Origin: Lepidodermella squamata
Lineage: Eukaryota > Animalia > Gastrotricha
NCBI GenBank assembly: GCA_047495785.1
Contig: JBLDXI010000032.1
Span: 3,348,001-3,412,000, forward strand
Direction of reading: 5' to 3'
DNA length: 64,000 bases
In this document: positions 32,984 through 62,989 of the stretch, piece after piece
Layout of the letters: each line of letters begins with the position of its first letter
Numbering within the stretch: the stretch's first letter is position 1
Translations under genes and position numbers: made by a program
The notes under the pieces: model-generated
What the model was told of the DNA's origin: nothing
The model's database searches: none
What the model saw: the letters and a program-made list of their open reading frames with translations, nothing else

Positions 32984-34124
32984 ATGATTCGAAGGACAGC
33001 TTATCTGATCGTCCTTACCGCGCTATCGCTTGACTCTGCTTTGAGTCAAAATAAGACTGCAATCAATCGTGAGTTTCGTAATCGCTATCTTGAGCAACCA
33101 TTAAATATTGAATTTATTTGTCTCAGTTAACTTCGAAAATTTGAAGTCTCAGTTGGGCAAAGACAAGGTTAGTTCGAACAGAGTTGGCGTGAATACGGAC
33201 GAATTAGCTTCGAGAAGCGGCGACCAGCTGAATTTTCTGCAGAACATTTCGAGCATTCGCCAGGATTATGCCAAGAAGGCGAATGAAGGGCCGCCTCCTC
33301 CGGTCGGTAATGGCACCCAACTATTGCAAAGGTTCAGGGAGGTGATCGGTGGTCCTGGCGCTAATGGCAGCACAAATGACACCCAGCCAAGACCGCCGCC
33401 TAAAATTAATGCCGAATGGAGACCCAGGGGTAACGATAGTAACCGCTCGAATAAAACATCAGGGCCGCCCCCAGCTGCTCCTATAGGCATTTCAGGCTCT
33501 GGTGGACCCCCTCAGGGACCTCCTCAGGGGATCTCAGGGTCTGGTGGGCCGCCTCAAGGAGGATCTCAGGGGCAGCAGGGTCAACAAAAAGGCCCTCCGA
33601 ATAATGGCACCGGCCAGCCGCCTCAAGGCCCTCCCCAAAATAATGGCACCGGGCAGGGTCAACAACAAGGTCCTCCGCCAAATAATGGCACCGGCCAGTC
33701 GTCTCAAGGCCCTCCCCCGATGAATGGCCAACAAGGACAACAGGGCCAAGGTCAACAGGGACCGCCGCCTCAATCAAACTCGACTTCATCAGCATCGGAT
33801 GGCGGATCGAAATCGCCGCAATTGCCACCTAGCAAACCAGGGCAAGGATCTGCGAGTGGCGGGCAGGGTCAGCAGGGACCGCCTTCAGGTGGCCAGCAAG
33901 GTCAGTCAGGAAGTCAAGGTGGCACGTCTCAGGGCGGATCGGGTGGTCAAAGTGGCCCGCCTCAAGGTGGATCAGGAGGTCAAGGTGGATCAGGTGGTCA
34001 AGGAGGCCCGCCCCAGGGTGGATCAGGAGGTCAAGGCGGATCAGGTGGTCAAGGTGGTCCACCTCAAGGGGGATCAGGTGGTCAAGGTGGATCTGGTGGG
34101 CAAGGACCCCCTCCAAGCGGCTAA
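32984..34124 (+). CDS. Secreted protein of the same family, member B, with a long Gly/Gln/Pro/Ser-rich repetitive tail
   Basis: Signal exon 32984-33068, phase-1 intron 33069-33126, motif LKSQLGKDKVSSNRVGVNTDE...GDQLN, repeats GPPxNNGTGQ and GGPPQGGSGGQGGSGGQ; ends PPSG*. Confidence 0.82.
33930..34120 (+). repeat. Coding tandem repeat, ~51 bp unit (GGPPQGGSGGQGGSGGQ)
   Basis: About 3-4 near-identical copies, visible in both DNA and protein. Confidence 0.8.
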
Positions 34125-40413: not shown

Positions 40414-43400
40414 TCAGCAGGTGAAATGGTTGGGAGCCAGCATAGATCTGGCCTCGACCACGACTTTTTGAATGCCCTTATCAGCGTCGTTCTCGTCGAT
40501 TTCAATACTCCGTTTTTCGCTGAGGAATGCGGCCAGCCAGGCCAAAGGTTGGAAATTCGACTGCAACTTGACGGCTAAATACGGCTTCTGCTTCCGGCTG
40601 ACGAGTTGCGCCTCGAAACAGCTTGTCTCACTTTTGTTGTACTCCTCGTTGTAGCAAACCAGGACAAGGTCAGCTCGGTCGATTTCCTTGCTGAGCGCAT
40701 TCTCAATGCTGATATCAGATCGGAATGTGGACGAGTCGTAGCGGACTTCGTAGTCGAAATACTCTAGAGCCCGGGCAAGTTTCTCCATCAACGGCTTGCT
40801 TCGCTTCTTGCGCCGGCAGTAACTGATAAATATCACCTTACGGCGCACTTCAATTGCTACTTTGTTGTTCTGGCGTTTCCTGAGATGAATAAAACAAATT
40901 AAGGTGGAGTTTAAGAGTAATTGAAAATCTTACTTGAGGTAGATAAAACAGCCGACAATCCCTGAACCGATGAAAACGACTAAACCAATGAGCAAGTAGG
41001 CCCACCATTGAATTTCAGGGTCCGCCTGGGTTGTATTCTCAGAAGGCTTGTTGATAAATTTCTGCGGCAAGTAAGTTGGCCTTTCATGTTTGATGACAAC
41101 CGACGCGACCTCAACATAAGGCGTGATCGGCTGTCCATTAGTTGGCAGGAGTAACGAGCAGTCGACTAGAGCATCGTAAATCGGGCTGATCCATCGACCG
41201 CTCGAGTCGGTAACTGGGCCTGATTCCGGCGTGGAAGTCTGTATTTCCCCGTTCCAGCATTGGATGGCTGTTTTGAAGGGTGAAGTGACGTTCCTGCAAA
41301 CTGCTAGACACATTTTGACGCCATCGTCCGCGGCCGAATAGTCGCTGCTGCCAGCTTTTTCAGAATGGCTCAACGCAGATTTCGCCGTCTTTCGAAATAG
41401 CCGACCGCTGTTTCTCGCCGACGGTTCCTCGCCAGCTTGAGCACTAAGTCTGGCCTCCCCACGAAATTCTTCGGCTTGCATCAGCTCCGCATCACCGGAT
41501 TGAGCTGTGAGGGGCGCAGTCGTGAGGGGCGAGGTCGTCGTTTCGGATAATGGCGTAGAAGCAGTGGTTACCTCCTCAGGAATCGGGGAGCTGCTGATTT
41601 CAACATCGCCCGTAACTGGAGGCGTTTCAGTTTCTGCTGGTTGCGAATTTGTCGTTGACTCCTCGACTGATTCTTCCAACTTACGTTCCGCTAAGGGAGT
41701 CACTGGATCAGGTGTAGAAGTAGCGAATTGCTCTTCAATTACTGGCTCCGTGGTCAGCAGTTCAGATGCATCGGATTGCGAGGTTGTAGCAGCTTCCGTA
41801 GGCTGATTATCACCTTCTGTAACAGTAGTGGGCATTGTTTCAGTTTCAGTAACAGGTTGCGGTGTAGAGGTTATCACTTCACTGATAACAACCACATCTA
41901 CTCGGCTCGGAATTGAGCTGGTTTCTAGAAAATCTGCAACGGTCGATGGGGCTGTTGAACTGCCTTCACTATCGACTAAAATTCGATCGTTCAGACGGGC
42001 TCGATCTGCAACGGTTGATGGTGCTGTTGAACTACCTTCACCGTCGACTAAAATTAGATCTTTTAGATGGGTGCTGGAGCTGATTGTTGCTTCAGGTAGC
42101 GAATTTCCTTCAGTTTCTTCAGGGATGTTCATCTCGATGATCTCTTCAGTCTTCTCGGTAACCACAGGAGGCTGAGTTGTAGCTTCATAACGCGTGGATG
42201 CGGGAACTTCTGTGGATGGCATAGGGGTTGTTTCAGCTATGGTTGACGTAGACTCACGCGGCGTAGTCGGCGGAGAGGGGTTCGTGCTTGAGATCTCATC
42301 CAGCGGCTCCTGGAGACGAATTGCTGCCGGACTGTCGTTCAAACCAGTGCCGTAGTTGTCTTCAGAGGGGGGATCGTTAGCGGCGCCAGAATCTGAATCG
42401 CCGTTTTCTGCAGGGCCATCGAAACTACTCCTCTCGCCGCCCGAAGGGCCTGCGTTGTTAGCAGCAGCCGGCGTAGCTTTTTGGGTGGTCGGCGATTCAG
42501 TCGGAGGCGCATCAGTGATTCCATTCATAATCGTCGAGCAGATGAACCGATGCCGTATCTCGGTGAGATTTGCGCAACGCGTGCTCAGAAAGCCATACTC
42601 CCCGCCAGAATCAACGGTAATCGCCGAGCAACTGTAAGCAGCAGGCGCGACTGGCTCGTTGCGAACTATCCAGCCGTCAAACTGCATCATCGTACCGTCA
42701 AGGAAGAACCACTGCTTACTTGTTGCTCCAACCCAAATTTGCACGTTGTTTTGGTTCCATTGATACAGCAGCTTGTTAATCGTGTTCTGTGTGTACTGGT
42801 AGGGAATTTTCGCGAGTTGGCCACCCTTCAACCGACACGCCCGTTCGGCTTGACTCCAAGAAAGGGAGGTTGTTGCGTAGAGATGGTAGCAAGCGTTGAT
42901 GTCACAACTAATACTGTCGACGTCTGCTGAAGTAATGAAGATTTTAGGGTTGAATTCACAGATGTAAGGCAGAGGGACAGCGCATCCGACATCGACCCAA
43001 TAATTGCTCTGGGTACTGTCGATCTGAACAGCGGCACAACTTCCGAAAACCGAGGGACGGCCAGGCTGCCAGTGGTCGAAAGATCGCTCGGCCGACGAGA
43101 AGACAATGCTGTTGAACAGACCGCCGCACATTTGATCGGTCGATCCTGAGCAGGGTACGCTGCAGTTCGAGGCCGGGCGTTTCCAGATGAAGGTGTCTGA
43201 GCAGTAGCAGAATGAGCCGTGGTGAATCGCCGCGTACAACATGCTTTGCTTTGAGCAGAAATCCATGCATTTATCGTGGCTCATCAGCGTCGACGATGAG
43301 TAGGTCTTCAACTCAGATTTCTCTGTCCAGCCGTTTTCGTAACACCCCTGGCCCCGTAACGGTCCACTCTGCGGCGCCCACTGCCACGGCATGTTGATGT

Positions 43401-43683
43401 AACGCAGGCCGGTCATAACGTCAGACCAATTTCGGGCGTAGACAGCCTTAGCGAGCTGGAACGTTTGGCTCTGAGTTCGAACCGTTGCGAGTTGTTTGTT
43501 ATTCTTGGCGCAAAATGCCTGCGCGTCGTCGAACGAGTCGATGGTTCTGTCCTCATGAAACGAGTAGCAAATGTTCTCGTATTGCTGGTCAGTCGACTCC
43601 GAGCAAGTAATGGCCGATGTTTGGCTGGAAATTGAGGCTAGCACGCCGAGTATCAGGGCGATTGATGAGGGTTTCCGTTTCAT
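40414..43683 (-). CDS. Predicted 1071-aa single-pass receptor: signal peptide, C-type lectin with inserted WSC domain, second C-type lectin, Ser/Thr/Pro/Glu stalk, TM helix, TIR (TIR_2-type) domain
   Basis: Exon 43683-40934 splices in phase 2 over the 54-nt intron 40933-40880 to give CFIYLK-KRQNNKVAIEVRRKVIFISY. CTLD motifs (CYSF, AQAFC, LATV, WVDVGC..LPYICE; SWSQAERACRLKGGQLA, IWVGA); WSC (GCY...CMDFC...CYC...CSVPCSGSTDQMCGG); TM WWAYLLIGLVVFIGSGIVGCFIYL; TIR IFISY...YNKSETSCFEA...FQPLAWL. Confidence 0.88.
41932..42065 (-). repeat. 72-bp (24-aa) in-frame duplication in the receptor stalk (ILVDxEGSSTAPSTVAD x2)
   Basis: atctgcaacgg... occurs at 41932 and 42004. Confidence 0.85.
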
Positions 43684-45326: not shown

Positions 45327-48231
45327 TTAATTGGTGTCAAATGTCATCCAGTTCCTGGGGTCGATTTGGAGGTTGTAAGCGGGCTTCGGTTGATTTCGAA
45401 TATGCCACGCTGGGCAGCGTTTTTCAATTTCATGTGCTGTATCGGTAGAAGGTGTCAGGGTCGATATGTGGTCTAGATACTTGGCAGTTACGAGTGAGCT
45501 AGCGAGACAGCGTTCGCCGTATCTCTTTAGGGCTTCATCAAACTTGAGGTCGATGCCGGGGACTCCGGCAAATGCTATGACGTCGATAGGGTGGGTTTCG
45601 TGAGGAAGGCTCAAAAGGGCTCTCAGGCAGTAGGCTTGCAGGTCCACCAGGCGGCTCAAGGATGAAGGGCTCAGGCAGGACCAGGCAGGCGCACCGTAAA
45701 GTAGGATCGGCTCCAAAAGAGTCTGGTAAAACAAAACACAAACCCTTTTGGGTAACAACTTAGTTTTTAAAATCCCATACAGAGACCCGACGCGTTGTCG
45801 GATCTTTGACGCGATTACGTCGATGTGATGCGACCAGGACAATTGTGGGGTCAGATGCAGGCCCAGATACCGCACCTGGTTGACTTGAGGGATGGCTTGG
45901 CCATACAGCTCGAGATGGATTGAGGGAGGTGTATTTCCGTAGTGGCCGAAGATGATAGCCTCGCATTTTTGCGGGTTCAGCATTAGCCGCCATCGTTTAC
46001 ACCACCTTTCGGTGGCACTGAGCCTTTTTTGCAGGCGCTTGACACAGACATTGTAGTTGTCGCCATATGCCCAGTTGATGGCGTCGTCGGCGTAAGTGCC
46101 TTTGGCGACACGACGTGCTCCGTCATCAGGGTTACAGCTTTTGGGCTGCATGTCGTTGGCATAAAAAATGAAAAGAAGCGGTGACAAGGGCGAGCCTTGC
46201 GGCACGCCGCAATAGATGTTCCTCGTTGCAGATAGCTCGCTTCCCACTCGGACTTGAAATGATCGGCCACGCAGGAAGTCAGAGACCCACCTTACTATTG
46301 GCACCGGTACCCCCGACTGCTCTAGCTTGAGACGCAGCCCGTCGTGCCAAATACAATCGAAAGCTGCTTTAAAATCCAGTAAAAGTGCAACAAGTTTCTT
46401 ACGTTTCGCTATCGAGAGGCCCACATCGCTGATAAATAAAAATAAGGGGTCGTTGGTAGAATGTAGTGGCTGAAAACCGAATTGGTGTCGTGGTAGTAAA
46501 TTGTTCAGGATTAAAAATCGATATAAAAACTTGGCAACAACAATTTCGAGACCTTTTGCAATCGCTGGCAGAAGAGAAACCGGCCTGTAGGAGTCCGGCA
46601 ACCTCGAGTCCTTACCCTCTTTGAGAATTGGGATGATGATGGCGACTTTCCACTTTTTCGGTACATAGCCGCAGTTTAAGCTGAGCTGGTACAGATACCT
46701 CAGATGTTTTGCCAAATTCTTACCTCCATGTTTCAGTAGGACGTTAGACACGTTGTCGCGGCCCGGAGCCTTCCATTTGAGCGATTTCATCATCTGCCTT
46801 ACCGCCCATTTCGGGACCCTTACCTGGACCCGCTTGGGTATGACACCTAGGGGCTTCATTGCTTCGCTTTTTGACATGTCGTCGGTAGTTTGGTCCCAAA
46901 ATCGCTGGTCTTCTGTCAAATTTGAGGTTATCGGCGGACCTTTCAGAACATTACCAAATGTTTCGGCAAGTAGCTCGCATTTGGCAGCATCGTCGGTGAC
47001 TCCTAAGCCTTTCGAGTTGGTTAAGATAGCAATTTTACGGTTTCGGCGTCGTCCTATGAGACGGCCGTTTACGGCTTGCCACGCTTGCCTTGTCTGATGC
47101 TGTTTGAATAGTCTAGCTAGCCTTTGAAGAAATTTTTCACAAGCACGAAGTTTTTCTTGAGCAATCAGAATTTTGATTTCTTTGTTCAGCCTATTCACAC
47201 TGGATTTGGCTTCGGAGGAATTTGTTTTGTCAAAAAGTCGCTGTAATTTATTTCTTTGCTCTAGTAGCGTAGCAATCTCTTTTGTGAGACGCCAGCTTGA
47301 AAGCTTGTATTCCTTACTTTTGGGTATAGTTTCGGCTGCCGCCCGCTGGATTGCTTCGACAATCGCGTCTGAGTAAGTCTCGATGCTTTCGACCGGGTCT
47401 CCTGGCTTGGGTTTAACAGGGTCGGCGATCTCCGCGAGCCAATGCTTCAGCCGCTCCTCGAAGCGCGTCCAATTGGCTTTGAAAAAGTCGAGTCTAGGTT
47501 CGTAGTTGTTTGCCGCTTCCGGGGGGTCTGGACTGGCTCGAAAGTTCACTTTAATTCTTGTGGCACAGTGGTCGCTGCCGTACTTGTCCTCGACCACGGC
47601 CGGACCCGTAAGGAGTGGGAGCACCGCCTGATTCGCCAACCATATGTCGATTTGTCGACCATAACCACTGTGCGAGAAGTGGGTTGGGGTGCCGTCGCTC
47701 ATCAGAGTGTGACCTTCCGAGTTTAGCCATGCAGCCAGGGCGGTTCCTGCTGGGTTTTTGCTGATGGGGTCGGATAACGTGGGGTGCCAGCAGTTTAGGT
47801 CGCCGGCAAATAAGCATGGTTGGTTTGGGTCGGTCGTGCCACCTAAAGCTATGTTCAAAAAAGTAAGATCAAGAGGGTAATTTGGAGAGCTGTATCCAGT
47901 TGCAACTGTGAGCTTTCGACCGTTTGAATCTGCCACTTTGAGCGCGAGCCACTCGCTGTGGTCAGTTGCGTATTGGAATGCTTCGACCACTCGAATTGAG
48001 TTCTTCACTGCTATTGCCACGCCGCCGTACATAACATTATTTGCTGCCTTTTCTTTCCTATCTAACCTGAAAACAGTAAAATTTGGGATGTGAAAATCAT
48101 CGTTATCGTCTAGCCATGTTTCGTTGATGAGCAAAATATCTAACATCAATGTTTGTATCAAAAAAAATAATCTCAGCTAATCTCAACGTTACTTTGCAAT
48201 GACCCGAATTCCATTGCCCTACCCAACACAT
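45327..48231 (-). CDS. LINE ORF2: AP endonuclease + reverse transcriptase (one-base frameshift near the 5' end)
   Basis: APE motifs INETWL, GGVAI, GDLN, SDH; RT motifs KAPGRD, YRPVSLL, QFGF, LDFKAAFD, GVPQGSPLSP, YADD, YLG. The main ORF is 45327-48161; the expected QWN start motif lies in another frame beginning at ATG 48231. Confidence 0.93.
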
Positions 48232-49811
48232 GATGACTTATCGGGAGGGGTCGATTTGTTACCTTGATTGTTCAAGTGCTTGGCCGTCGCGGGTTTACTG
48301 GGTTTACCTGCTGGGACATCCGTGCTTCGGACATAGTCCCCTGAAGTGATCTGGCCCCACTCTCTTGCGGCCTCGTCGTGTGTGGGTGCTGGCGTCTGCA
48401 TGGTGGCTAGGAAATTTGACATTGTGCGAAAGTTCACCTCAAGGCGGGATATTGCGTCGGCAAGTGTCTGGAGCTTGGAGTGAAGATCGCCTAGCAGCTG
48501 GCTCCTTAGCTTCTCGACGACAAGTGGGGCAATCTTCGTGGCGATATCTTCCATTAGCCGGTCGCTGTGAAATATCTGTTTGGGCTGGATTTGCCAGGCC
48601 GGAGTTATTGGTGGAGGAGCTGGTATGAATGTCGGTTGTAGCGGCGGCGACGCCTCGTCAGTAGGAGCTCCTGTGTCTTTTCTACCTTGAATTTTGGCAA
48701 TTTTGGAAAGAACACGCTCTTCGTCACGTTTGACTGCATTAACGACTGCCTTGCAACCACCCCAGTTCGCCGAGTGTGGACCGTTGCAATTAGCGCATTT
48801 ACGAGCACTCGGCTTGTCCTTCAGTTCGCAATCTCTGGTGTAATGCTCGCCGGCACACCATCCGCATTTTTTGACGGTTGATCGGCAGTGCTTGGTCAGA
48901 TGATCGTGGCTTTGACAAGCGTTGCACCTGATGGGGTGGTGAACAGCTTTCAACTCCTTGCCTTTGATCCTGCATATGCTGAAAAGTAACCCATCTCCCT
49001 TGGTTAATTGCTTCGCCAGCTCCACTGTTTTCATGTAGCAAAATACTTTACCATGGGTAACTGCGACGTCTTCGACCTTCTCGGCCCATTTCGTCTTTAT
49101 CGCTTCTGCTGAGATCGTGCTGGGGAACCCTGTGCATTCGACAGCTCGCCCTTCAGCCTGCGCTGTTTTACGAGCATCGTTGGACGTTGGTTTACGTTGG
49201 TTTGTCTTGGCTTCATCTGGGAAATATTCATAATATTTCTCCGTGCGATGAACTCGAATGCCTCCCCCGAAGGCGTCTTCCGCCCAGCCTTTAAGAATCA
49301 TAGCATCAGATGCCATTTCGGGGGTTTCAAAGGTGATTCGGGCTCCTCCCATGCCAAGGACGACCAGTCTGGAAATTCTGACCTTACCGTCAGTTGCTCT
49401 GTCGAGTTCCGTGATCATGTCGCCGTCATTTTTAAAATCGGGCGAAATGTCGTCGATGACTACCACGCACTTTTCGCGCGCGCGAGCGGCAGCTTGCGCC
49501 GCCTTCTTGGCATCTTCGCTTTCCCGTGATTCCTGTTCGTAGGTCGGAGTTTGGCTCATCGAGGATGCCCTCCCCCTGGTGATGGTTCCGGGAGTTTTGC
49601 GGCGAAGATCTTCGTTGGTTACTGGCTTTTTTGCCGTAGTACCTGCGCCGTTAATTACCTTTGTCGCTGGTTCTCCGGTTGGTGATGGCTGCGAGGCCCT
49701 CGACGGTGACTGTTGTCTGCTCGCTGGCGTGGAACCGCTCCCGCCGATTGCCCCAGGCAGCAGGGAACCCTTGATGGGGATGGAGGGGTTTGAAGGGTGT
49801 GCTTCAGACAT
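48219..49811 (-). CDS. LINE ORF1 gag-like nucleic acid-binding protein
   Basis: Three CCHC knuckles (CNACQSHDHLTKHC, CGWCAGEHYTRDC, CANCNGPHSANWGGC) directly upstream of ORF2. Confidence 0.9.
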   Translation of the reverse strand: MSEAHPSNPSIPIKGSLLPGAIGGSGSTPASRQQSPSRASQPSPTGEPATKVINGAGTTAKKPVTNEDLRRKTPGTITRGRASSMSQTPTYEQESRESEDAKKAAQAAARAREKCVVVIDDISPDFKNDGDMITELDRATDGKVRISRLVVLGMGGARITFETPEMASDAMILKGWAEDAFGGGIRVHRTEKYYEYFPDEAKTNQRKPTSNDARKTAQAEGRAVECTGFPSTISAEAIKTKWAEKVEDVAVTHGKVFCYMKTVELAKQLTKGDGLLFSICRIKGKELKAVHHPIRCNACQSHDHLTKHCRSTVKKCGWCAGEHYTRDCELKDKPSARKCANCNGPHSANWGGCKAVVNAVKRDEERVLSKIAKIQGRKDTGAPTDEASPPLQPTFIPAPPPITPAWQIQPKQIFHSDRLMEDIATKIAPLVVEKLRSQLLGDLHSKLQTLADAISRLEVNFRTMSNFLATMQTPAPTHDEAAREWGQITSGDYVRSTDVPAGKPSKPATAKHLNNQGNKSTPPDKSSCVG

Positions 49812-51930: not shown

Positions 51931-54900
51931 ATGACTAAAATCGACGTCGAGTCAGGTCAACTCTCTAACGCTGCCGATCTTCGGAAGAAAAATGCCGCCC
52001 TTCGAAGTTTCGTAAGAGACAACTTCAAACTTCCGAACTCTTCGGATGCTAACAAGAGTTATGGCTATGTGGCAAGTGGAACTGACATCGTCCGGCCTTA
52101 TCTTCGCATTCACGGTGGGCACATGGACCTGAACCACATGGCGCACGTGTACAATGTGGTGAGCAACTTCTGGAAATTCCCGCAGCCCCGTGCTATCGTT
52201 GAAATAACCGGTTCAGCCCACCCGGCTATAAATAGACGAGACGAGTTGGCGGCATTGATCAAGTCTAAACATAAAACTTGGTTTCCTGACGGATCCTGGA
52301 TCATCACAGGCGGATGCAATAGCGGGGTAATGAAACTATTTGCTGATTCTATAACGCTCGCACGACGAAATTCGACTCTGTCGCCCACACCGCGGACAGT
52401 TTGCATGGGCATCGCTACGTGGGCGACGCTTGATTCGAAAGATCTTAAACTAATGGAATCAGCTGATGGATGTATCGTGCGACACGATGAGGGTCATCCA
52501 AATACGACTGAGGGAAATAATAAGAAACTTAACCTAGGTCACGACTGTTTCATCTTGGTTGACAAGGGCGAAACTGGCTACAATCAAGAGGTTGATTTTC
52601 GCAACTTGTTTGTCGACTATTTGTCCGAACTTGATCGAAGTGTTGACATTCCGGTTGTTCTCCTCCTAATCGGCGGAGGCTCTGCGAGTTTGAAAACTGT
52701 TTATCTAGCTGTAACTGTGAATGAAGGTGAAGCTCAAGCGTCACTAGACATAGAACCGAGGCAGGTTGTGGTTTTCAAGGGCAGTGGCCGAGCGGCTGAT
52801 GCTATTCAAACAACGATAGAAATGTTCAGCCGTGATAAAAACATACGCTTCGACGAATTCGTTGCCAAGTTCCCAAGTGATCTGTTAACTGAAATCTTGG
52901 GTGGAGCTGATTCCGACAAGTACAACGATGATGAACTAAGAAAGAGGGTGTTCGAACATTTGGCAAACATCGCCATGAGGCGGCACATGGTTCGCATTGC
53001 TGACCCTTTCAACGAGCCGAATAGCTTCCGAGTTTTTGAGCCAGTAATTATCTTCAATTATGACACGACATTTTCATGTCTCTGTATTTAGGAGGATTCA
53101 AGTTGTACCAGAACTGAAAAATTCGTCGCCGACAATTTCGAACACAGACAATGCCGGAAGTTTCAAGCGATGAAGAAAAGTGATATCAAACGATTTCTAC
53201 AAAATCGAATAGAATTGTAAGTCGATTTAAAGCATAAACCTGACTTGAGTTTTTTATTCAGTTTTCCGGATAAAAATCTTGTTTGCAAATGTGGTCGGCC
53301 TAACCACAAACCAACAAGTAACGAAGACGTCCTAGTTGAAAATGACACGTTTGAAACTCAACTGGCTGAGTGTAACACCGCTCGATGTGGAACCCTGAAG
53401 TTCGAAGCTGACCACAGTGATCCTAAATATTTCTCTCACGATTTGGCGTCTTTCGTGCCCTGCCACAGCAAGTTCTTACGGCTCTACTACGACGACTCAA
53501 AGCACGATCACCCGCTATTTTGGCTCAAACTTCAAGCCCTAATCACTGAGTACTGGAACGTCCGGCGGCCTCAAGTGTTGATCGAAGTTACCGGATCTGC
53601 GGAAGATATGCGGCATATTAACCCGAAAATTCTGCAAGATCTGCAGTTCGGCATCGTTCAGGCGAGTATTAAATCGAAGGCTTGGCTAATTACCGGGGGT
53701 ACGAATTGTGGCGTGATGAAGCTTGTTGGCGATGCGTTGGCTGACTTCCGGTCAACACATGAAGGCGCGGGTGTGCCTTGCTTCGGAATATCCACGTGGG
53801 GCATGCTCGAGCACAGAAATTCGATATTCGCACCGGAAAGGTGCAGGCAAGGAGTCGTTGAGTATCCTTTCAAAAACGATCAAGACTACGTCGCGAGAAA
53901 AGATCGGGGCAATCACTACGAGCTTAATCCCGGTCATGACTACTATATCTTCGTTGACACGGGCAAGGAAGAGCAATTCGGGCAGGAGATCGTTTTCCGT
54001 AATAAGCTGCTCAATCACTTCTCCCGGTTGCCTCCGTACAAGAGTATAGTCGAAAACAGCCAAACACCCCTCGTGCTACTGGTCATTAGCGGAGGTCCGG
54101 GAACACTTGGTACAGTAGAGGAAGCTGCTAATTCCGTAATATTAAACAACTCCACTGCGATTGAAATTTCATTCTAATATACCTATAGGCAGAAAGAAAT
54201 CAACGTAGACCCATTGTTCTGGTAAAAGGTTTCGGGGGTTGTGCTGATTTCTTGTCATACGCCTACTACAGTGTGACTGACAAGACGAAAACTGTGGATG
54301 AGTGGCTGGCTTTGATGAAGCAAGATAGCAATTTCATTGACAAATTGAATGTCGCAAAAAAGTGGAGCAACGTAGAAGAGGATTTCAGAAAGGAGGCAGA
54401 GAAATGGCGCCAAAGGCTATCAGCTGATCTTGATTCCGTAAAATGAGCAAAAATTCATCTAAATTTATTGACACTTAAATTGTTCATAGGTAACAGTTTT
54501 AGATATGGAACGTTGCTCGTTAACCGACGAAGGCCGGTTCCTTGAAGATGCGATCCTAGATGGCATTTTCAAGCTGAAACGGAAGGAGAAAGAATCGATC
54601 GAAAGTACTTTTGAGCTCTCCCTCATTTGGGACCGGGTTGATTTCGCAGAGAAAATAATCGGTGATAGCGTGCTATGCGAAGTCATCCGGGCTTCGAAGG
54701 ACACAAGACTGCTGACCAAAGCCATGACTATCGCTATCAAAAAGAACCAGCCAGAACTGTTTCAGCTGTATGTAGAAAGCGGTTTGGTCGAACCCCTCAG
54801 TTTCTTTCGTGGACTTTCCAGCAAACGCTCTGCTGTGATTTTCCACAAGGTGAGCTCCCCTTTTCAAGTTCTACCTTTCACACTGTTTTTATAGGTCCTA

Positions 54901-57212
54901 CAACACCCGACAACATGGGGAGATAGGGGACCCATTTCTCAGAGTCACTTGCACCTTCTTCAATACTTGAGTGGTTATGAACTTGTAAGCTTTTCATGAC
55001 TTGCTGACTCATTCATATTGGCTCTTTTTTACAGCGAAGAGAGTCGAGCTTCAAGCTGAATTATGAAATTGAAGACATTTCTATCCCTAAGCTGGAGGAT
55101 ATGGAAGACCTGATGACGTCAGTCTTTGATGTAAGACAGGGCTATTCCGAACGAAGGAACCTACCGCGTTTCATCGACTTGGTGAAAACTCGGCAATCCG
55201 AACTGACGATGAATGACGAGTACAACACGACGCTGAAAAATCTGATCATGCTCCAGCTGTTTCTATGCCGAGATTCTTTCGCTGTTGTAGCGTGGAAAGT
55301 TGCCATGAAAAGTGACTTCCTTGGCACGGCTGTCATGGCAAGCATTTTCCTATCAAATTTAGCTATAATAGCCCGCAAGATCCATCGGCATGATCTGGCC
55401 TCTGAGTATACAACATTGGCAGAGTAATTTTTAACAAAAATGTGCCTTGCCTTGTTTGATTCCATTTCCCTTCCTTAGGAAATGGGAAAATCGAGCGGTT
55501 GGATTGATTGACTATTTAGCTCAGGGCCAGCAGGAAGATCTTTACGATATCCTTATGAGAGGATTAAGAGTCTGGGACAATGCTAACGTTCTTTGTATGG
55601 CTTACGTCAGCAAAAAACTCGGCGTAATCGCAGCACCTTCAGTCCAGGTTGTCCTTGAAACAATTTGGAAAACAAGATGGAGTGAAAAGTACGCCATTGA
55701 CGGCGGGTCGAACTGCTTCGAATCCATTGCTAAGAAGAAATCAAAGACCTATCCTGAGGTTGAGCCGAGCTTGAGTCGGGCAAAAGAACCAGTCAAAGAC
55801 TTTATTTATCCTTACAATATCCCTCCGATAGCCAAGTTTGTGCTGTACTCAATCAGCCTGCTTATTTTCCTGTTCCTGATTCTTGGCAAACTGGTTCACA
55901 TGCCGCACGACTCAGACAAATGTGATGCTGAGTCACTTGGAATCGTGGTTGCGACATGGCTTTGGGGTTTCAGTTTCACCGCCGGGGCAGCTTTGGAGGT
56001 AAGCCCTTCCTTCTAGCATTATACCTGGCTTATAATGGCTCTTTAGTTTGCATTATCCCATATACTGTCAACGGACAACGCGATTACAATGATGGCCCAA
56101 GGATTTTTGACAGTTTCAGCTAGTCTTACATGGAACGCTTGCATGCGTGGTGATGTCAAGTAAGGAACCCTTGAAAATCTGTTTACATGGATCTAAATTA
56201 GTCGTTATTGAAGGTCCGACTCATTCCTTATCTATGAGCGATTCAACACGGCAAAGACACTATACGCCCTATCTTGCCTGCTATTTTGGTTCAAGTTGTT
56301 TCGAATCCTTCAGATTAACAAAACTATCGGGCCTAAAGTCAAAGCGCTTTTTGAAATGGTAAGATTATTATCTGCATGAATTAATTTTACGAACAATTTG
56401 CTTGCAGTTCAAAGATGTGCTCTTCTTTTGTGTCCTTCATTTTATCATGCTTTTCGCATTCGCCGGACCTATCTATGCCCTAATGAAGTTCAATCGCACA
56501 AGTGAAAAAGAATCATGGTCATTAGAGGAACTTGTAGCGTTGATTGGAAAGGTCGTCAACTACCGCTGGTGGAACATCGTTGCTGTCGCCTTGGACGATA
56601 GCAAGAGGCTGTCCTACGGCAGTGGAGCGTGCGATAAAGCCATGTCTATCGAATCTGACGAGGAGACAGCGGCTTACTTTAGACAGTACGGTCCTGGAAT
56701 TGTTGAGCCGGTTAATCATACTCAGGTCTGCAACTACTCGAATCTTCTGTCGGGCATACTACTAATGATCTATCTGATCGTAACGAATATCATCCTCCTT
56801 AACATGTTGATAGCAAACTTCGCATCAACGGTCGAACGGAATCGCATTTCAGCTGAAATCATGTGGAAGTTTGAGAGATATCTTCTGATTCGAAGTTATA
56901 CCGAAAAAGCCATCCTGCCGCCTCCTTTCAGTCTCGTAGAAATACCTGTTCTAGCTGTTCTGAAACTCTGGAGAAAGTCCAGAGGCCTTAGCAGTCCATT
57001 TGGTTATTTTTTAAAGAAATTATGAAAAAGAAATCCAAACGTTTATTTTATTGTTTTTAGCAATAACCATCCCAGATGGAGCATTGGTGCAAAAGTTGGC
57101 AACAAGTGATGACGGTTCGAACTTTGAAAAGAACAAATCAGAGCTTTACAAGCATCGCTATATGCAATTAAACAAACTGGAATGCGAAGCTGTTTGGGCT
57201 GTTGCAGGCTGA
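51931..57212 (+). CDS. TRPM: TRPM-family channel, paralog 4, with two tandem SLOG/MHR1-2 domains and a truncated C-terminus
   Basis: SLOG-1 (EITGSA, WIITGGCNSGVMK, LNLGHDCFILVD) splices in frame via exon 53092-53216 to CKCGR plus SLOG-2 (WLITGGTNCGVMKLVG, LNPGHDYYIFVD, GGPGT). Then MHR3-4, TM helices, pore NYRWWNIVAVALD, LLNMLIA, TRP box WKFER; stop at 57210-57212. Confidence 0.9.
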
Positions 57213-57822
57213 AATTTTTCGAACTTTTTCAAACACAAATGTTCTTCAATCGTTGAAATAAAGTGGTAACCGGCGGAACGGTTCCTTTTTTGGTTTGTGA
57301 TTAGGTTTGAAAATGTTGGGTGATTAGTTATTCTTCATTAGTTTATTTATCAATTATTAATCTCATTAATGACATCGCCCAGAGCATATTGATATTAAAA
57401 GTACACCATGGTCGTGATCATTAAAATCTACTAAGGCATGGAACCTGGATGTGATTCACAGCCGAGCGGCTTGGAGCCTTGCAGGAATCATTGCATGCTG
57501 AGGCAAATAAAAAAACTAGTCTAAATAATTAAAGGGCAGTATGGATTGACCGTAGTCATAACACATGTGCTTTCACGACTGGTTCGATGAATGGCCCGGT
57601 CGATAGTCCTAGTAATTTACTATAGCGCGCAATAGTTCCTTCTATTTATGAGGCAAGGACGCAGCTCCATGGCTACAAAAAATAAATAAACTTTTCACTG
57701 AGCCAAAACTACAGACACCGGTTGAATGCCGACACCGTGCTGAGCTAAATCAGAGATTTGAGCTGTAAATCTCAAACAAAATTCATAATTTGTATTGCAA
57801 ACAACTCAAAGGTGAATGCTCA

Positions 57823-60800
57823 ATGACTTCTAGGGCTGGTGTTCAAAACCGAGCAAATGAGGTGAATTTTTACGAATTTTCAAATTCTCTATTTCACCAT
57901 CAATGGCAATTTTAGGCTTCCAGGCAAATTTACGGTGAAAATCGAACAACTTTTGCTCCATTTGTCCGAACTCATTTCAGCAAACTCCCCCCGCGGAAAG
58001 ATGAAAATACCGACGAAACTCTTCCCAGCGAGCCGAATGAATCTTTCGGTAGCATTCAACTCCCCGGCGGTCCTCGGCGTCCGTATTTAAGAGTCGATGG
58101 TCAACGGCAGGATTTGGAGTATTTCGAGAAGGTTTACCAGGTTCTAACTTCTCATTGGGGACTTCCAGTTCCTCAGTTCATTCTCGAAGTAACAGGCTCC
58201 TCTGAAGAGTTTTTCCTCGACTCGGATCAAGCAAAAAATGAACAGCTACTTCTCGAACTTGAAAGCTACGTCAGACATATGGTACAAACTGAAAGCCAAG
58301 AGCATGTTTGGGTCATAAGTGGGGGTGGTGATGGAGGGGCCATGCGATTGGTCGGGCAGGCTTTGGCCGGAATTAGTCACCTTGCACCTTGCATAGCCTT
58401 CACACCCTGGTGCTCGAACCTTGCCGGCCGAGAATTACTGAGAAATGGCAGCAATGAAAGTTCAGTCCTCTATAAGCCCCCACCCAGCAACGAGAAGCAG
58501 ATTTCACTGAACATGGACCATAGCTGTTTCATTCTGGTCGATCAGGGTGTCGAGGAGAAAGGATGGGGTCAAGAGGTGGAATTTCGCAGTGCCTTCATCG
58601 ACTACGTCTGCCGGCAGAAGTTCTCCGAGCAAATACCTGTCGCCCTAGCTCTTTTCGGCGGGGGTAAAAATACGTTAAAAACAGTGAATCAAACAATTTC
58701 GACATCGCAAGAGGACCTAAATGCCGGTCGTCTCAACGATCCTCGACCAGTAATTGTATTTTCTGGAACGACTCGAGCAGCAGAGTGTATTTCATTCGTG
58801 CTAAAGTCTTACAAGCCAGAAATGACAAGTATCGACAGTCTGGCCGAAGAAATCAAAACGCGGTATATCTCAGATATTTTCGCAACTTTATCCGGTCCAC
58901 CAGAAGAAAAGTTGGTGAAAAAAGCGCTGGAGAGTTTGCGGAATATTGCTATGCGGCGGCATATGGTCACTGTCGTAAATGCGTTTTCTGAGAACCGAAT
59001 GCAACGAGTGAAAATTTCTAATTTCGAAACGCGTCTGACTCCTCAGCAGCGAACGTGCCAATTCGTGGACAACAACTTCGTTCACAAACGATGCGAAAAG
59101 TTCGAGCTGATCACGGATGATGAGAAGAAACGGATTGAGGGTAATTTGCTCAAGAAAATGAACCTCGAAAGGCTGTGCAAATGCGGTCGAGACGACCACC
59201 CCCTGCTAGATCAAGATCAGTCAAAGTGGGACCATTCTCAACGAGTTGGTACTTTGTACTTCTACGGAGATCCATCTGTTAATTCAGCCATTCTCCAGTC
59301 CTTTGTCCCGTGCTACAGCAAGTTCATACGGCTGCCGTATGACAAAGAAGCAGCCACCGACTTTTACTTCGAAAAAGTGTTGGCTTTGCTGTTCGAATTC
59401 TGGCAGATGCAGAAACCTCAGATGCTCATCGAAGTAACCGGAACAGCGACTGATATGAGGCAAGTCGATCATTCAATACTTCAACAGCTAAAGGTCGGCC
59501 TTGTTCGAGTTGCAAAGAAAGCTAAGGCGTGGCTTATCGCTGGAGGGACGAATACCGGGGTTATGAAACTGATGGGCGATGCTGTTCACGAGGACCGGGT
59601 CACCCATGGTGGTATTGGTGTCGATTGTCTTGGCATTGCTCCTTATGGCATGATGGAGAACCGGCATACAATCTTCGATAAAACAAACGTTAAAGATGGT
59701 CTTGTGAGATATCCATACAAGAACGATGAGGACTACGGCAAGAGATTTGCAAATGGGGCGGTTTACGAACTGAACCCTGGCTACAATCATTACATTCTGG
59801 TGGATACCGGTAAAGAAAATCGCTTCCAGGAAGAGATTGATTTTCGGTCCAAACTCATTGGGTACTTGTCGCGGCAAAAGCCCTTCAAAACGAAAACCGG
59901 CAGCGATCAAACCCCTCTTGTGCTCCTCGTTGTAGGCGGTGGTCCCGGCACCCTGAGAACGATCGTAGACTCCCTAAGAGCTAGTAAACGCCCCGTTGTA
60001 ATCTTGAAAGGTTTCGGGGGTCTCGGCGATTTCCTCGCAGATTTTTCGGCAAGCCTTGATGATCCAAGTCTTGCAAAAGACTTGCCGAAGCATAACTACA
60101 TCGAAGCCATAGCAATACGAGAGAAGCATACTCGCAAGAACGACGCAATCTACAAGAGCGATTTGGAAGCTGTTGTGACCGAGATTTTCAACGACAGGAG
60201 CTTGATCACGATTGTCGACATGTCTACGGCTGAATCCATGGCAGCGCAATCATTAGACGACTGTATCATTGAGGCTATCTTCAAGGTTGCCCCAAGCCCC
60301 GATAATGAAGCCGCTGGATTAGAGCGTTACGTCAAGAGCAGCTTCGAACTTGCATTGAAGTGGAACCGGATCAAAGCAGCACGTAGATTCCTTGCTGATC
60401 CAAGAGCTTACAAGGTCATCCAATCAGCAAAACTCACTGGGCCGGACGCTGGCCAACTTTTGGTAGACAAAGCGATGACATTTGCAATTAAGAGAGACCA
60501 GCCGAAGCTGTTCAAGCTTTACATTCAAACTGGCCTTGTAGAACCAAGGAAATTCTTCTACAGCGATAACCCTAATCAAGTTGCCATCGTCTATCATAAG
60601 CTTTTCTGGCATCCATCATCTTGGCTGAACCACAAAAAGGTTGTTCCAACTCGCAATCGCACGCTGTTTCAGCACATTCTGGAGGCCTACCACGGCCGGC
60701 CTAAAGTTGGAAAGAACATGGCTTTTAGGTTCAACTACGAAGCAGATTCACATGAGCCACTCTTGGCGATAATGGACGCTGTTGAGCCAGCTTTTCGGTC

Positions 60801-62989
60801 GTTCTTCTGCTTGCCCGCAACTCTGAATATGAAAGCAAAGGCGGAAATGCGAAGACTCCGACTCGACAAGAAGACTAAACAGGACGATGATTTCTTGTTC
60901 GAGCTAGCTGTTCGAGACATCTTTCTCTTGATGTTACTGCTTTCGAGGGATGAATTCGCTGTTGCTGTCTGGAGCACAGCTCAAACTGGTGATTTTCTCG
61001 GAACATGCGTTATGGCTGTCCTTTTCCTGGAGAAGCTAGCCAATGCCGCAGACGGCATTCGAAGGCGAGACTTGTACGACGACTACAAGGAAATGGCCGA
61101 GTTTGTTTACGATATTTGATAACAGATGAATTGTTTTAATTTTGAATGAATTATATAGGAAATGGGAACAACGAGCTTTGGCCATAATTCAAAGCTTGTC
61201 CGAAAGCCAATCTCAACGGTTGGGCATCCTATTAACACGGAGCTTGCGTACTTGGCATGGTGCCAATATTCTTCAAATGGCATTTCATGGCGACCGCCTC
61301 AGTATCATGTCTCATTCTGCAGTTCAAATTGAGCTGGAAAAAGTTTGGAAGGGTGTTTCAATGGAACAAGAGGCGGCCGTTAAGCCGTCGAAGAAGCGGA
61401 CACTGAAGAATATCGTTACGGCTGTCACAGGTTTTCGAGCAGCACTCAAAGCTCCTTCGACACTGTCCCATCGTGGCACCAGTGCTGCTCATGTCAAACC
61501 TGTGGTGAAGACTCACGATGTGGAGACGGGAAATGCATGCTTGTGCTGCCGAACTGCTACAGTCAATCCATGGACTCAAAAGCAACAAATTAACCAGCCC
61601 CAACAGCAGTCGGACGAAGACAAAAAGACCGCGGAATCTGTTGCGTTGTTCTACCGAACCAGCCCTCGTGTCAAGTTCACGTTCTTTGCGTTTGCTCTCC
61701 TCATCTACCTGTTTGTCTTATTCGGAGACGTCATTTACATCACCCACGAACCGCAGATTTGCCGAGTTGGACCAAGTTGGCAAATGATCTACATTTGGGT
61801 TAGCACGCTAATGTTTGTTGCCGATGCGTTCCACGAAATTCGCATTTTTGACCGAATATCATGGGACAATGGCACTACTTTGATAGGAGCCGTGCTTATG
61901 TTCGTATCCTTCATCCTGAGACTGATCTGCTACAACGTGAGTGGCGACGTAGACCCGCTTGTGTTCAGCTTCTCCAGGATTTTATACGCCATATCCAGCA
62001 TCTTCTTGTGGTTCAAATGTTTCCGTCTGCTTTTTGTGTTCAAAAAAATTGGCCCGATGGTTTTGACGTTATTTGAAATGGTAAAACTATCCTGAATTTT
62101 TTCAATCTAATTTCCAAACGAGTATCTTTGTTACAGTTCAATGACGTCATATTTTTCGCAATTCTACATTTCATCATTTTGTTTGCATTCGCCGGTCCAA
62201 TCTATGGGTTATCAGCCATGCCGCTGAATCGCGATGGTCACGGCAACACGGACGAATACTTTGCGCTAATGGCCAGTGTTATCTACGATCGATGGTGGAA
62301 CATAGTCGGCATATCCCTCGATAGATCCACCAGTTTGGGCGAGACATGCGAAAACGTCATTTCCCCAACAAAAGCCTTCGAAAAAGAGCCCGATAATACT
62401 TCCAATTCAACCGGTGTCAATGACACAAACACTTCATTTTTCGCTTTGATGACTACAACCGCTGCCCCGACAGAGGCAAGTGGGAGCTGCGACTACAGGA
62501 GCGTTGTATCGAGCATCTTGTTAATGGCCTTCCTCTTGCTCACCAATATAGTTCTGCTGAATATGTTAATCGCTAGTTTCAGTTTTACAATTAGCGAGTA
62601 TCAAGGCAAAGCCGAGGAGTTGTGGAAATTCGGCCGATATCACTTGATCCGCAGTTTCGCTGAAAAGCCAGTCATGCCTCCACCTCTGAATATTTTCGAG
62701 CTGATTTTCTTCAACTCTAACGTTTTCGGACGATGCATTCCTCATAAATGGAGCACGAGCTTGGGTGAGAAAATGAAAGTAATGAACAAGCCATATTATT
62801 GAAATATTTGAATTTTTAGAAACTCATTTTATTGGTGAGTCAGATAGCTTTGATCCTGATCTAACAGGGCGAACAGGTGAACAGGGCGATGAGAGCACTT
62901 GGGTCAACAAACGCGAGCTGTCCAAATTCCGATACCGCGAGCTGAATTGTATCGAAAAAACTGCTGCCTCGAAAATTTTGTTAGAATAA
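57823..62989 (+). CDS. TRPM: TRPM-family channel, paralog 5, with two tandem SLOG/MHR1-2 domains and a truncated C-terminus
   Basis: ATG 57823 splices in frame to 57916. One ~3.2-kb exon holds SLOG-1 (EVTGSS, ISGGGDGGAMR, LNMDHSCFILVD), CKCGR, SLOG-2 (IAGGTNTGVMK, LNPGYNHYILVD, GGGPGTL) and MHR3-4. Pore YDRWWNIVGISLD, TRP box WKFGR; stop at 62987-62989. Confidence 0.92.

What the first reader, a model, noticed from the sequence alone, without database searches (positions are those of the whole stretch)
57916..60220. TRPM channel with a tandemly duplicated SLOG/MHR1-2 sensor in one uninterrupted exon
Seen: two full sets of SLOG motifs (xEVTG, GG..G.M, LN..H..ILVD, E..FR, GGG, VIV..G) in a single ORF, so the architecture cannot be a splicing artefact. 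The second copy keeps the TRPM N-terminal Cys motif (C..F...CKCGR), which suggests the first copy was prepended. Copy 1 is more derived (SGGGDGGAMR, IAFTPW, SGTTRAA). Known: described TRPMs have one MHR1-2 per subunit. Inference: eight potential nucleotide sites per tetramer, allowing two-ligand gating or a decoy/regulatory copy.
Basis: partly seen in the sequence, partly recalled or inferred. Interest (0 to 1): 0.82.

Follow-up and report, generated by a model that had tools for sequence, protein, structure and literature searches.

The report
TRPM channel genes with doubled SLOG domain
Two neighbouring ion-channel genes of the TRPM family in a small invertebrate each carry two copies in series of the nucleotide-sensing "SLOG" domain, where all described TRPM channels have one; the doubling is real, old and transcribed, but what the extra copy does is untested.

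Summary
One open reading frame (57916-61100, exon 2 of a five-exon gene) contains two complete LSDAT_euk/SLOG (MHR1/2) domains. Pfam gives E 1.3e-27 for copy 1 and 2.8e-42 for copy 2. MHR3/4, a six-helix pore domain and a TRP box follow.

The upstream tandem paralogue (gene A, 51931-57025) has the same two-copy layout. Three other TRPM genes in the window have one SLOG each. Copy 1 of A pairs with copy 1 of B, and copy 2 with copy 2, so the domain doubling predates the gene duplication.

cDNA-like contigs cover both copies and confirm two downstream introns. AlphaFold folds copy 1 as a full MHR1/2 (pLDDT 84). A low-confidence linker of about 80 residues joins the copies and holds the TRPM Cys motif.

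Copy 1 evolves about three times faster than copy 2. Even so, it keeps all three side chains that contact ADP-ribose in TRPM2 (aromatic, Arg, Arg). Copy 2 has Gly at the second Arg.

An exhaustive search found no copy-1 orthologue elsewhere. It did find independent parallels: a brittle-star double-SLOG TRPM model and channel-less octopus SLOG arrays. I found no paper describing any of these.

The scan holds this same stretch once more under its own id (s1-431999), and no equivalent on other DNA.

Verdict: a new variant of a known kind.

The parts
57823..57861 (+). Gene B predicted exon 1 (ATG, 13 codons)
   Evidence: An in-frame ATG is followed by a 54-nt GT..AG intron (57862-57915) that keeps the frame. 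The N-terminal length to the FVR..F motif matches gene A. The exon is not covered by the cDNA-like contigs, so it is predicted only.
57916..61100 (+). Gene B exon 2: one uninterrupted ORF holding copy 1, linker, copy 2 and most of MHR3/4
   Evidence: The frame is open. The 3' end is fixed by an RNA joint 61100>61159 with GT..AG ends. Run X2 shows depth above zero in every bin from 57894 onwards.
57943..58980 (+). SLOG/MHR1-2 copy 1 (fold boundaries; Pfam core 58123-58932)
   Evidence: Pfam LSDAT_euk E 1.3e-27. AlphaFold2 gives pLDDT 83.9 and pTM 0.86, folded over residues 10-355. Foldseek matches TRPM3/2/7/8 MHR1/2 at E 1e-18 to 2e-20, with TMt 0.69 to the isolated TRPM2 MHR1/2 crystal structure 7aov.
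58990..59241 (+). Inter-copy linker (about 84 residues), containing the TRPM pre-MHR Cys motif at about 59056-59199
   Evidence: pLDDT is below 50 over residues 359-442 of the two-copy model. The Cys motif was read directly and matches the N-termini of P0001, P0019 and P0160. The Cys-rich region is a TRPM feature absent from TRPS (PMC13143021).
59245..60288 (+). SLOG/MHR1-2 copy 2, in the canonical position next to MHR3 (Pfam core 59320-60066)
   Evidence: Pfam LSDAT_euk E 2.8e-42. The closest solved chains are the TRPM2 MHR1/2 structures 7aov, 6co7 and 6drj, E 4e-30 to 4e-29. The model shows the same order of secondary-structure elements as copy 1.
60301..61100 (+). MHR3/4 region (continues into exon 3)
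   Evidence: Pfam PF25508 TRPM2-like domain, E 1.9e-4 here and 7.1e-5 in exon 3. Each piece is below the gathering score because the domain is split by the intron. tblastn to relatives' MHR3/4 gives E 9e-21.
61159..62079 (+). Gene B exon 3: end of MHR4, S1-S5
   Evidence: RNA joints on both sides: a 58-nt intron at 61101-61158 and a 56-nt intron at 62080-62135, both GT..AG. Aligned with TRPM transmembrane domains.
62136..62764 (+). Gene B exon 4: pore loop, S6, TRP box (WKFGRY)
   Evidence: Pfam Ion_trans E 2.6e-5. The S6 and TRP box align with TRPM2-like proteins.
62820..62989 (+). Gene B predicted last exon and stop; mRNA end near 63047
   Evidence: A 55-nt GT..AG intron (62765-62819) gives a C-terminal peptide conserved with gene A (NK.EL.K.RY..LN). 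A SMART cDNA oligo plus T-run appears as a loose end at 63047. The intron itself was not among the joints shown.
51931..54437 (+). Gene A (tandem paralogue), N-terminal half: copy 1 (exon 51931-53043), linker exon with FV..NF..C motif (53092-53216), copy 2 (53262-54135 and 54189-54437)
   Evidence: Pfam LSDAT_euk E 1.7e-27 for copy 1 and 7.1e-36 for copy 2. The in-frame GT..AG introns of 48, 45 and 53 nt give a 787-residue product without stops. A1 and B1 are 32% identical, A2 and B2 49%.
54505..57025 (+). Gene A, MHR3/4 and channel exons
   Evidence: tblastn with gene B pieces finds colinear matches. Exon boundaries were not worked out.

Best explanation
Genes A and B are two old tandem paralogues of a lineage-specific TRPM cation-channel subfamily. 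In this subfamily the whole N-terminal unit (pre-MHR motif plus the MHR1/2 SLOG domain, about 400 residues) was duplicated in tandem before the two genes separated.

Shown:
- Both copies are complete SLOG/MHR1-2 folds in one reading frame.
- Both copies are covered by cDNA-like contigs.
- Both copies have been kept open in two paralogues that are now only 32-49% identical.
- MHR3/4, S1-S6 and the TRP box are intact.
- There is no NUDT9H domain.

Inferred:
- Copy 2 is covalently continuous with MHR3, so it takes the canonical place in the cytosolic ring of the tetramer.
- Copy 1 hangs from it on a flexible linker of about 80 residues. It acts as an extra, faster-evolving ligand-sensing or regulatory module.
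- Copy 1 keeps the aromatic/Arg/Arg side chains that clamp ADP-ribose in TRPM2. Copy 2, like all single-SLOG TRPMs of this lineage, has Gly at the phosphate-binding Arg. Copy 1 is therefore the more likely nucleotide binder.
- Functionally this would resemble vertebrate TRPM2, which also has two nucleotide-binding domains per subunit (MHR1/2 plus NUDT9H). Here the second site comes from doubling the SLOG.
For: Two LSDAT_euk hits in each of genes A and B. The reading frame is uninterrupted in B, and the introns in A are in frame. Run X2 shows GT..AG intron-skipping joints, a SMART-oligo/poly(A) loose end, zero depth in the 57500-57893 bins upstream of exon 2, and depth across both copies. Differences between the runs and the window in 59173-61029 fall almost entirely on third codon positions (my count). 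A1+B1 form a clade at 99/96 support and A2+B2 at 100/99. Copy 1 folds at pLDDT 83.9 and matches TRPM MHR1/2 structures. In the two-copy model both domains fold with one-to-one secondary structure, the linker 359-442 is below pLDDT 50 and pTM is 0.48. Residue mapping against hsTRPM2 Y295/R302/R358 (PMC6759353) used the drTRPM2 alignment and hmmalign. It gives W/R/R for copy 1 of B and Y/R/R for copy 1 of A, against F/R/G for copy 2 of both genes. The channel core and TRP box align with TRPMs.
Against: There are no functional data. No single contig or read spans copy 1 to copy 2, because the contigs are about 90-350 nt. Exon 1 and the start codon are predicted only. Copy 1 has long branches (1.4-1.8 against 0.5-0.6), and in gene B its b5-a3 loop and a7 N-terminus are altered (GGGDGG and GGGKNT), which could equally mean relaxed constraint. 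The Arg equivalent to R358 is also conserved in TRPMs that do not bind ADPR, so it does not prove binding. The Ca2+ site of TRPM2/4/5/8 is only half conserved (E and N kept, Q>I and D>T). The two-copy model rests on 13 sequences, so the absence of a predicted inter-copy contact is weak evidence.
Confidence: 0.68

Rival explanations
1. Copy 1 is a functionless remnant: a tolerated N-terminal extension left by a tandem exon duplication and drifting under relaxed constraint, while the channel works through copy 2 alone.
For: Copy 1 evolves about three times faster than copy 2. It has lost the Cys motif and the GGPGT turn. Its Pfam score is lower.
Against: About 1,100 nt have stayed open in two paralogues that diverged to 32% identity. 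The core motifs and the three ligand-contacting side chains are retained in both genes. The fold is confident. The C-terminal helix-strand of copy 1 (NIAMRRHMV) is almost identical between A and B.
Confidence: 0.14
2. The main product is a normal single-SLOG channel. Transcripts mostly start or are trans-spliced in the linker, and copy 1 is either a separate small SLOG protein or a minor isoform.
For: Other agents' notes say this genome uses spliced-leader trans-splicing (unchecked). Gene B has an in-frame Met just before CKCGR. Contig depth dips in the linker bins at 58879-59272.
Against: There is no stop codon between the copies in B, and none in A after removal of in-frame GT..AG introns. 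By my estimate, chance would leave a linker of about 130 codons open with probability about 0.002, and it is open in both genes. Gene A has no Met at that place. Depth over copy 1 (12-26) is no lower than over copy 2 (4-21), although contig depth is a poor measure.
Confidence: 0.1
3. On origin: copy 1 is not a self-duplicate of copy 2. It was captured from another, earlier-diverging TRPM paralogue, by fusion with the 5' part of an upstream gene in a tandem array.
For: Copy 1 keeps the ancestral GSGR state. Copy 2, the three single-SLOG genes of the window and the metagenomic relatives all share the derived GFGG. Copy 1 is sister to all of them at 87/89 support. The locus is a tandem TRPM array.
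Against: The AU test does not reject a clade of A1, B1, A2 and B2 (p 0.137). The long copy-1 branch can be pulled to the base. No donor-like single-SLOG gene with GSGR was seen in the window.
Confidence: 0.25
4. Assembly or annotation artefact: two genes or haplotypes were wrongly joined.
For: Several multi-SLOG database proteins look like such fusions: P0016, P0019, P0035 with near-identical copies, and P0014.
Against: Two diverged paralogues show the same order of parts. An independent DNA run (X1) and the cDNA-like run (X2) both tile the region. The copies are only 28% identical, so no collapse or duplication error can have produced them.
Confidence: 0.02

Closest known systems
TRPM2-type channels (nvTRPM2, drTRPM2, hsTRPM2; PDB 6co7, 6drj, 7aov, 6puo)
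   Same: N-terminal Cys-rich motif, MHR1/2 SLOG, MHR3/4, six-helix channel and TRP box. Copy 2's best solved matches are TRPM2 MHR1/2. Copy 1 keeps the residues equivalent to Y295, R302 and R358. Human TRPM2 also has two nucleotide-binding domains per subunit (PMC6759353).
   Different: There are two MHR1/2 domains in series instead of one. There is no NUDT9H domain and the C-terminus is very short. Copy 2 has Gly at R358. The S2-S3 Ca2+ site is only half conserved. Identity is only 22-35%.
Single-SLOG TRPM genes of the same lineage (window genes at 1-3535, 6252-10071 and 12942-16633; metagenomic relatives P0161, P0162 and P0029)
   Same: They form one clade at 97/94 support, share the GFGG substitution with copy 2, and have compact genes with very short introns.
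   Different: They have one SLOG each. No copy-1 counterpart was found.
Amphiura filiformis (brittle star) RefSeq model XP_072049890.1 / XP_072049892.1 (P0160/P0039)
   Same: The same architecture: SLOG (107-355), SLOG (443-699), MHR3/4 and channel, with a short C-terminus.
   Different: It is an independent duplication, because its two copies are each other's nearest relatives at 100/99 support. There the first copy keeps the Cys motif and the second has lost it. It is a computational gene model only.
Octopus 'uncharacterized protein' SLOG arrays (P0012, P0013, P0283, P0284, P0286; O. sinensis, O. vulgaris, O. bimaculoides)
   Same: TRPM-type SLOG domains repeated head to tail with a period of about 360 residues.
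   Different: They have three to four copies and no MHR3/4 or channel domain. They arose by a separate duplication history.
Bacterial SLOG sensors such as Thoeris ThsA (SIR2-SLOG)
   Same: A SLOG domain acts as receptor for a NAD-derived nucleotide signal made by a TIR protein. This rests on established knowledge and on abstracts listed. A TIR-domain receptor gene lies in the same window.
   Different: The effector is different, there is no channel, and no homology beyond the SLOG fold was tested here. The link is an analogy only.

Membership tests
TRPM channels | N-terminal MHR1/2 = LSDAT_euk SLOG domain | tested here: met
   PF18139 scores 237 bits against a cut-off of 25.7, in two stretches. 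Both copies pass separately. The copy-1 model matches MHR1/2 of TRPM2/3/7/8.
TRPM channels | MHR3/4 region (Pfam PF25508 TRPM2-like domain) between SLOG and channel | tested here: inconclusive
   The hits are 22.1 and 23.5 bits on two exon pieces, each under the 27-bit cut-off. The spliced protein could not be submitted by reference. Colinear tblastn matches to relatives whose products carry PF25508 give E 9e-21.
TRPM channels | Six-helix channel domain with pore loop, followed by a TRP box (WKFxR) | tested here: met
   Ion_trans scores 24.0 bits against a cut-off of 25 on the exon-4 piece alone. The alignment with TRPM2-like proteins shows S1-S6, the LLNxLIA S6 motif and WKFGRY.
TRPM channels | Cys-rich segment before MHR1/2 (separates TRPM from TRPS; PMC13143021) | tested here: met
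   C-x12-C...CKCGR..H lies before copy 2 in gene B, and the same motif is in gene A. It is absent before copy 1.
TRPM channels | One MHR1/2 per subunit (the architecture of all described members) | tested here: not met
   There are two per subunit in genes A and B. This is the point of difference, so I file it as a variant.
ADPR-gated TRPM2 subtype | ADPR-contacting residues in the MHR1/2 cleft (hs Y295, R302, R358) | tested here: inconclusive
   Copy 1 has W or Y, then R, then R. Copy 2 has F, R, G. Presence of the side chains does not show binding.
ADPR-gated TRPM2 subtype | C-terminal NUDT9H (Nudix) domain | tested here: not met
   No PF00293 or PF25969 hit on any gene B piece. The protein ends about 100 residues after the TRP box.
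ADPR-gated TRPM2 subtype | Ca2+ site in S2-S3 (E, Q, N, D) | tested here: not met
   The alignment shows E and N kept, Q>I and D>T. It is a MAFFT alignment of divergent sequences, so confidence is moderate.

The most novel reading that the evidence does not exclude
Copy 1 is an autonomous second receptor for a NAD-derived signal (ADPR, 2'-deoxy-ADPR or a cyclic ADPR isomer), possibly one made by TIR-domain receptors such as the lectin-WSC-TIR gene 15 kb upstream. Under this reading, these channels would be the output of an animal TIR-to-SLOG signalling path analogous to bacterial Thoeris, with two differently tuned ligand sites per subunit.
Probability: 0.07. Interest if true: 0.9.

Novelty: new variant of a known kind. 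Interest (0 to 1): 0.55.

Why it matters
MHR1/2 is the orthosteric ligand site of TRPM2, and every solved or described TRPM has it once per subunit. A natural channel with two such domains in series offers a ready-made experiment on how SLOG ligand binding couples to gating. The two copies have been kept for a long time in two paralogues, and their clefts are differently equipped.

The finding also shows that the TRPM N-terminal module can duplicate. It has done so independently in at least three animal lineages: this one, a brittle star, and octopus as channel-less arrays. The most recent family-wide evolutionary survey (PMC13143021) does not mention this.

The practical value is modest until ligand binding or electrophysiology is done.

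Tried and rejected
- Word-index protein search with the two-copy region: it found only single-SLOG TRPMs at 28-35% identity.
- Taxon from a UPF1-like helicase ORF: the best hits were about 40% identical and spread over fungi, protists and animals, so they gave no information. The organism stays unidentified by my own tests. Other agents' notes suggest a gastrotrich, which I did not check.
- Search for the assembly accession of the brittle-star model in papers: nothing found.
- First mixed alignment for the two-copy fold (A2): MAFFT stacked nearly all rows, including gene A copy 1, on copy 2. I discarded it for a 13-row alignment made mainly of two-SLOG segments (A3).
- Fixed pseudo-dimer of the two copies: no confident arrangement was predicted (pTM 0.48, linker below pLDDT 50). 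This is not evidence of absence.
- Several multi-SLOG database proteins were considered as precedents and set aside as probable merged gene models. These are oyster P0016 (SLOG...MHR3/4...SLOG), jellyfish P0019 (the whole MHR1-4 doubled), P0035 (near-identical copies) and sturgeon P0014 (flagged as a contaminant).
- Ka/Ks between A and B: not attempted, because synonymous sites are saturated at 32-49% protein identity.
- A script printed a long read-through by mistake after a mistyped donor pattern. It was corrected, and nothing was taken from the faulty output.
Full report
**What is at the coordinates**

The window comes from an animal genome with compact genes and introns of 45-58 nt. I could not identify the organism myself. 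Notes by other agents suggest a gastrotrich that uses spliced-leader trans-splicing (unchecked).

The frame entered at 57916 stays open to 61119. Pfam finds LSDAT_euk ('SLOG in TRPM') in two separate stretches of this ORF. Scanned apart, 57916-59100 scores E 1.3e-27 over profile positions 12-265 of 266, and 59101-60300 scores E 2.8e-42. The two halves match each other at 28% identity, E 6e-23.

**Gene model**

The cDNA-like run X2 gives two GT..AG joints, 61100>61159 (58 nt) and 62079>62136 (56 nt). It also gives a loose end at 63047 made of a SMART cDNA oligo plus a T-run. Depth is zero in the 57500-57893 bins and above zero in every later bin through both SLOG copies.

I predict three further features:
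- A 13-codon first exon at 57823-57861, followed by a 54-nt in-frame intron.
- A 55-nt intron at 62765-62819.
- A last exon ending at 62989, whose peptide is conserved with the paralogue.

The product is about 1,647 residues. In order it holds the pre-MHR motif without cysteines, SLOG copy 1, a linker with the TRPM Cys motif, SLOG copy 2, MHR3/4, S1-S6, the TRP box WKFGRY and a short tail. There is no NUDT9H, kinase or long coiled coil.

**The surroundings change the picture**

tblastn with gene B pieces shows five TRPM genes in the window. Three have one SLOG each (1-3535 minus strand, 6252-10071 plus, 12942-16633 minus). The gene immediately upstream (gene A, 51931-57025) has two, like gene B (Pfam E 1.7e-27 and 7.1e-36).

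In gene A the two copies are separated by three in-frame GT..AG introns of 48, 45 and 53 nt. Removing them gives 787 residues without a stop and the same FV..NF..C...CKCGR linker. A1 and B1 are 32% identical, A2 and B2 49%, and B1 and B2 28%. The domain doubling is therefore older than the A/B gene duplication. Both copies have stayed open in two lineages for a long time.

In the stretch 59173-61029, differences between the public runs and the window fall almost entirely on third codon positions (my count). No such differences were listed for copy 1.

**Structure**

With a 63-row alignment, AlphaFold2 folds copy 1 at mean pLDDT 83.9 and pTM 0.86. Foldseek matches it to MHR1/2 of TRPM3, TRPM2, TRPM7 and TRPM8 at E 1e-18 to 2e-20. 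It covers 339 columns of the isolated TRPM2 MHR1/2 crystal structure 7aov with TMt 0.69.

The two-copy model is shallower (13 rows, pLDDT 67, pTM 0.48). It shows the same succession of strands and helices twice. Residues 359-442, the linker that holds the Cys motif, are below pLDDT 50. The picture is two complete modules on a flexible tether, with no confident mutual packing.

**Ligand-site residues**

[quoted passage not shown] Its phosphates meet R358 and the N-terminus of helix a7, and a ribose meets R302 (PMC6759353).

In the drTRPM2 alignment, the Tyr-to-Arg and Arg-to-Arg spacings (7 and 56 residues) equal those of human Y295/R302/R358. This fixes the equivalences. The hmmalign mapping gives:

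| Domain | Y295 position | R302 position | R358 position |
|---|---|---|---|
| Copy 1, gene B | Trp | Arg | Arg (TTRAAE) |
| Copy 1, gene A | Tyr | Arg | Arg (GSGRAAD) |
| Copy 2, genes A and B | Phe | Arg | Gly (GFGG) |

The three single-SLOG genes of the window and the metagenomic relatives also carry GFGG. Copy 1 of gene B has altered loops (GGGDGG and GGGKNT), while copy 1 of gene A is closer to canonical.

By these markers the distal, faster-evolving copy is the better-equipped nucleotide site. This is the reverse of a 'decoy copy 1'. The Arg is also conserved in TRPMs that are not ADPR-gated, so this is suggestive only.

**Origin**

In trees of SLOG domains:
- A1+B1 form a pair at 99/96 support and A2+B2 at 100/99.
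- Both pairs fall in a clade at 97/94 with the window's single-SLOG genes and with compact eukaryotic genes from metagenome contigs (P0161, P0162, P0029). Those relatives have one SLOG each.
- Copy 1 is sister to all the others at 87/89.
- An AU test does not reject a clade of the four A/B domains (p 0.137).

Copy 1 has long branches (1.4-1.8 against 0.5-0.6). The GSGR/GFGG character agrees with an early split. Two origins remain open: an old tandem self-duplication followed by acceleration, or capture of the 5' part of an earlier-diverging neighbour in the array.

Both copies are preceded by an FV..(N)F motif, so the duplicated unit was the whole N-terminal module. In the brittle-star case below, it is the first copy that keeps them.

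**How unusual it is**

An exhaustive HMMER search of 1.84 billion cluster representatives with the two-copy region gave 1,377 hits. Among the best 150 listed, every best-scoring stretch lay on the copy 2 part of the query. No orthologue of copy 1 showed up.

Domain mapping of those 150 hits, of 11 from the earlier word search and of 114 more TRPMs found few multi-SLOG proteins:
1. Amphiura filiformis RefSeq models XP_072049890.1 and XP_072049892.1. They have the same SLOG-SLOG-MHR3/4-channel layout, and their two copies are each other's closest relatives (100/99), so the duplication was independent.
2. Octopus 'uncharacterized' proteins from three species, with three or four SLOGs at a period of about 360 residues and no channel.
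3. Several probable merged gene models (oyster, jellyfish, an ENA contig, a contaminated sturgeon record).

Full-text searches for doubled, tandem or second SLOG or MHR domains returned nothing relevant. The 2026 family-wide survey of TRPM domain gains and losses does not mention such an architecture. The architecture is rare, undescribed in the papers I could search, and recurrent.

**Mechanism**

*Shown:*
- A transcribed, intact TRPM gene pair with two SLOG/MHR1-2 folds per subunit and an intact channel core.

*Inferred:*
- Copy 2 is continuous with MHR3 and occupies the canonical position in the cytosolic ring.
- Copy 1 is a tethered extra sensor or regulator that could bind an ADPR-like nucleotide and act on copy 2 or a neighbouring subunit. 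This would parallel the way NUDT9H supplies a second nucleotide site in vertebrate TRPM2.
- The S2-S3 Ca2+ site is only half conserved, so the Ca2+ co-activation typical of TRPM2/4/5/8 cannot be assumed.

*Rivals:*
- Copy 1 is a drifting remnant.
- The main isoform is single-SLOG and starts in the linker.
- Copy 1 was captured from another paralogue.
- The arrangement is an artefact. This last is effectively excluded, because two diverged paralogues and independent DNA and cDNA runs agree.

**Limits**

- The contigs laid were short, so no single molecule is shown to span both copies.
- Exon 1, the last intron and the start codon are predictions.
- The organism's identity and possible trans-splicing at 57916 were not tested.

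Noticed in passing
window 1-3535 (-), 6252-10071 (+), 12942-16633 (-): Three further TRPM-like genes, each with a single SLOG. With genes A and B they make a five-gene TRPM array in 64 kb. All three carry GFGG where TRPM2 has the phosphate-binding GSGR.
   Followed up: partly
window 40414-43683 (-): A receptor-like gene with WSC and C-type lectin domains, a Ser/Thr/Pro-rich stalk and a transmembrane segment (917-aa ORF), followed by a 144-aa ORF with a TIR_2 domain (E 3.8e-12). It lies between the TRPM genes. TIR enzymes can make ADPR-type ligands of SLOG domains, but no link to the channels was tested.
   Followed up: partly
window 45327-49811 (-): An apparently intact LINE. One ORF carries an AP-endonuclease and a reverse transcriptase (944 aa), and an upstream 530-aa ORF1 has no Pfam match.
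   Followed up: partly
P0012, P0013, P0283, P0284, P0286 (Octopus sinensis, O. vulgaris, O. bimaculoides): Conserved 'uncharacterized' proteins made of three or four TRPM-type SLOG domains in tandem with no channel domain. I found no paper on them.
   Followed up: partly
L001:10001-49054 (Amphiura filiformis, CM076868.1): A RefSeq TRPM model with two SLOG domains that arose independently of the window's. Here the first copy keeps the Cys motif and the second has lost it.
   Followed up: partly
L002-L005 (ENA metagenome contigs, ERZ27333047 and ERZ23486787): Compact eukaryotic contigs whose single-SLOG TRPM genes are the closest relatives of the window's TRPMs. One is very close to the window gene at 1-3535. 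They probably come from an animal of the same group living in the sampled habitat.
   Followed up: no
window 23602-24797 and 25940-27296 (+): Two neighbouring pairs of ORFs with clearly similar sequences, suggesting a tandem gene duplicate (shared motif GDGT.SE, and the ORF pairs resemble each other throughout). Not scanned against families.
   Followed up: no
window 33108-34124 (+): A long ORF of low complexity rich in Gly, Gln, Pro and Ser, with repeated GGSGGQGG and QGPP units. Not examined.
   Followed up: no
window 62136-62764: The pore loop of gene B carries an insert of about 60 residues rich in Asn-x-Ser/Thr sites between the pore helix and S6, compared with other TRPMs.
   Followed up: no
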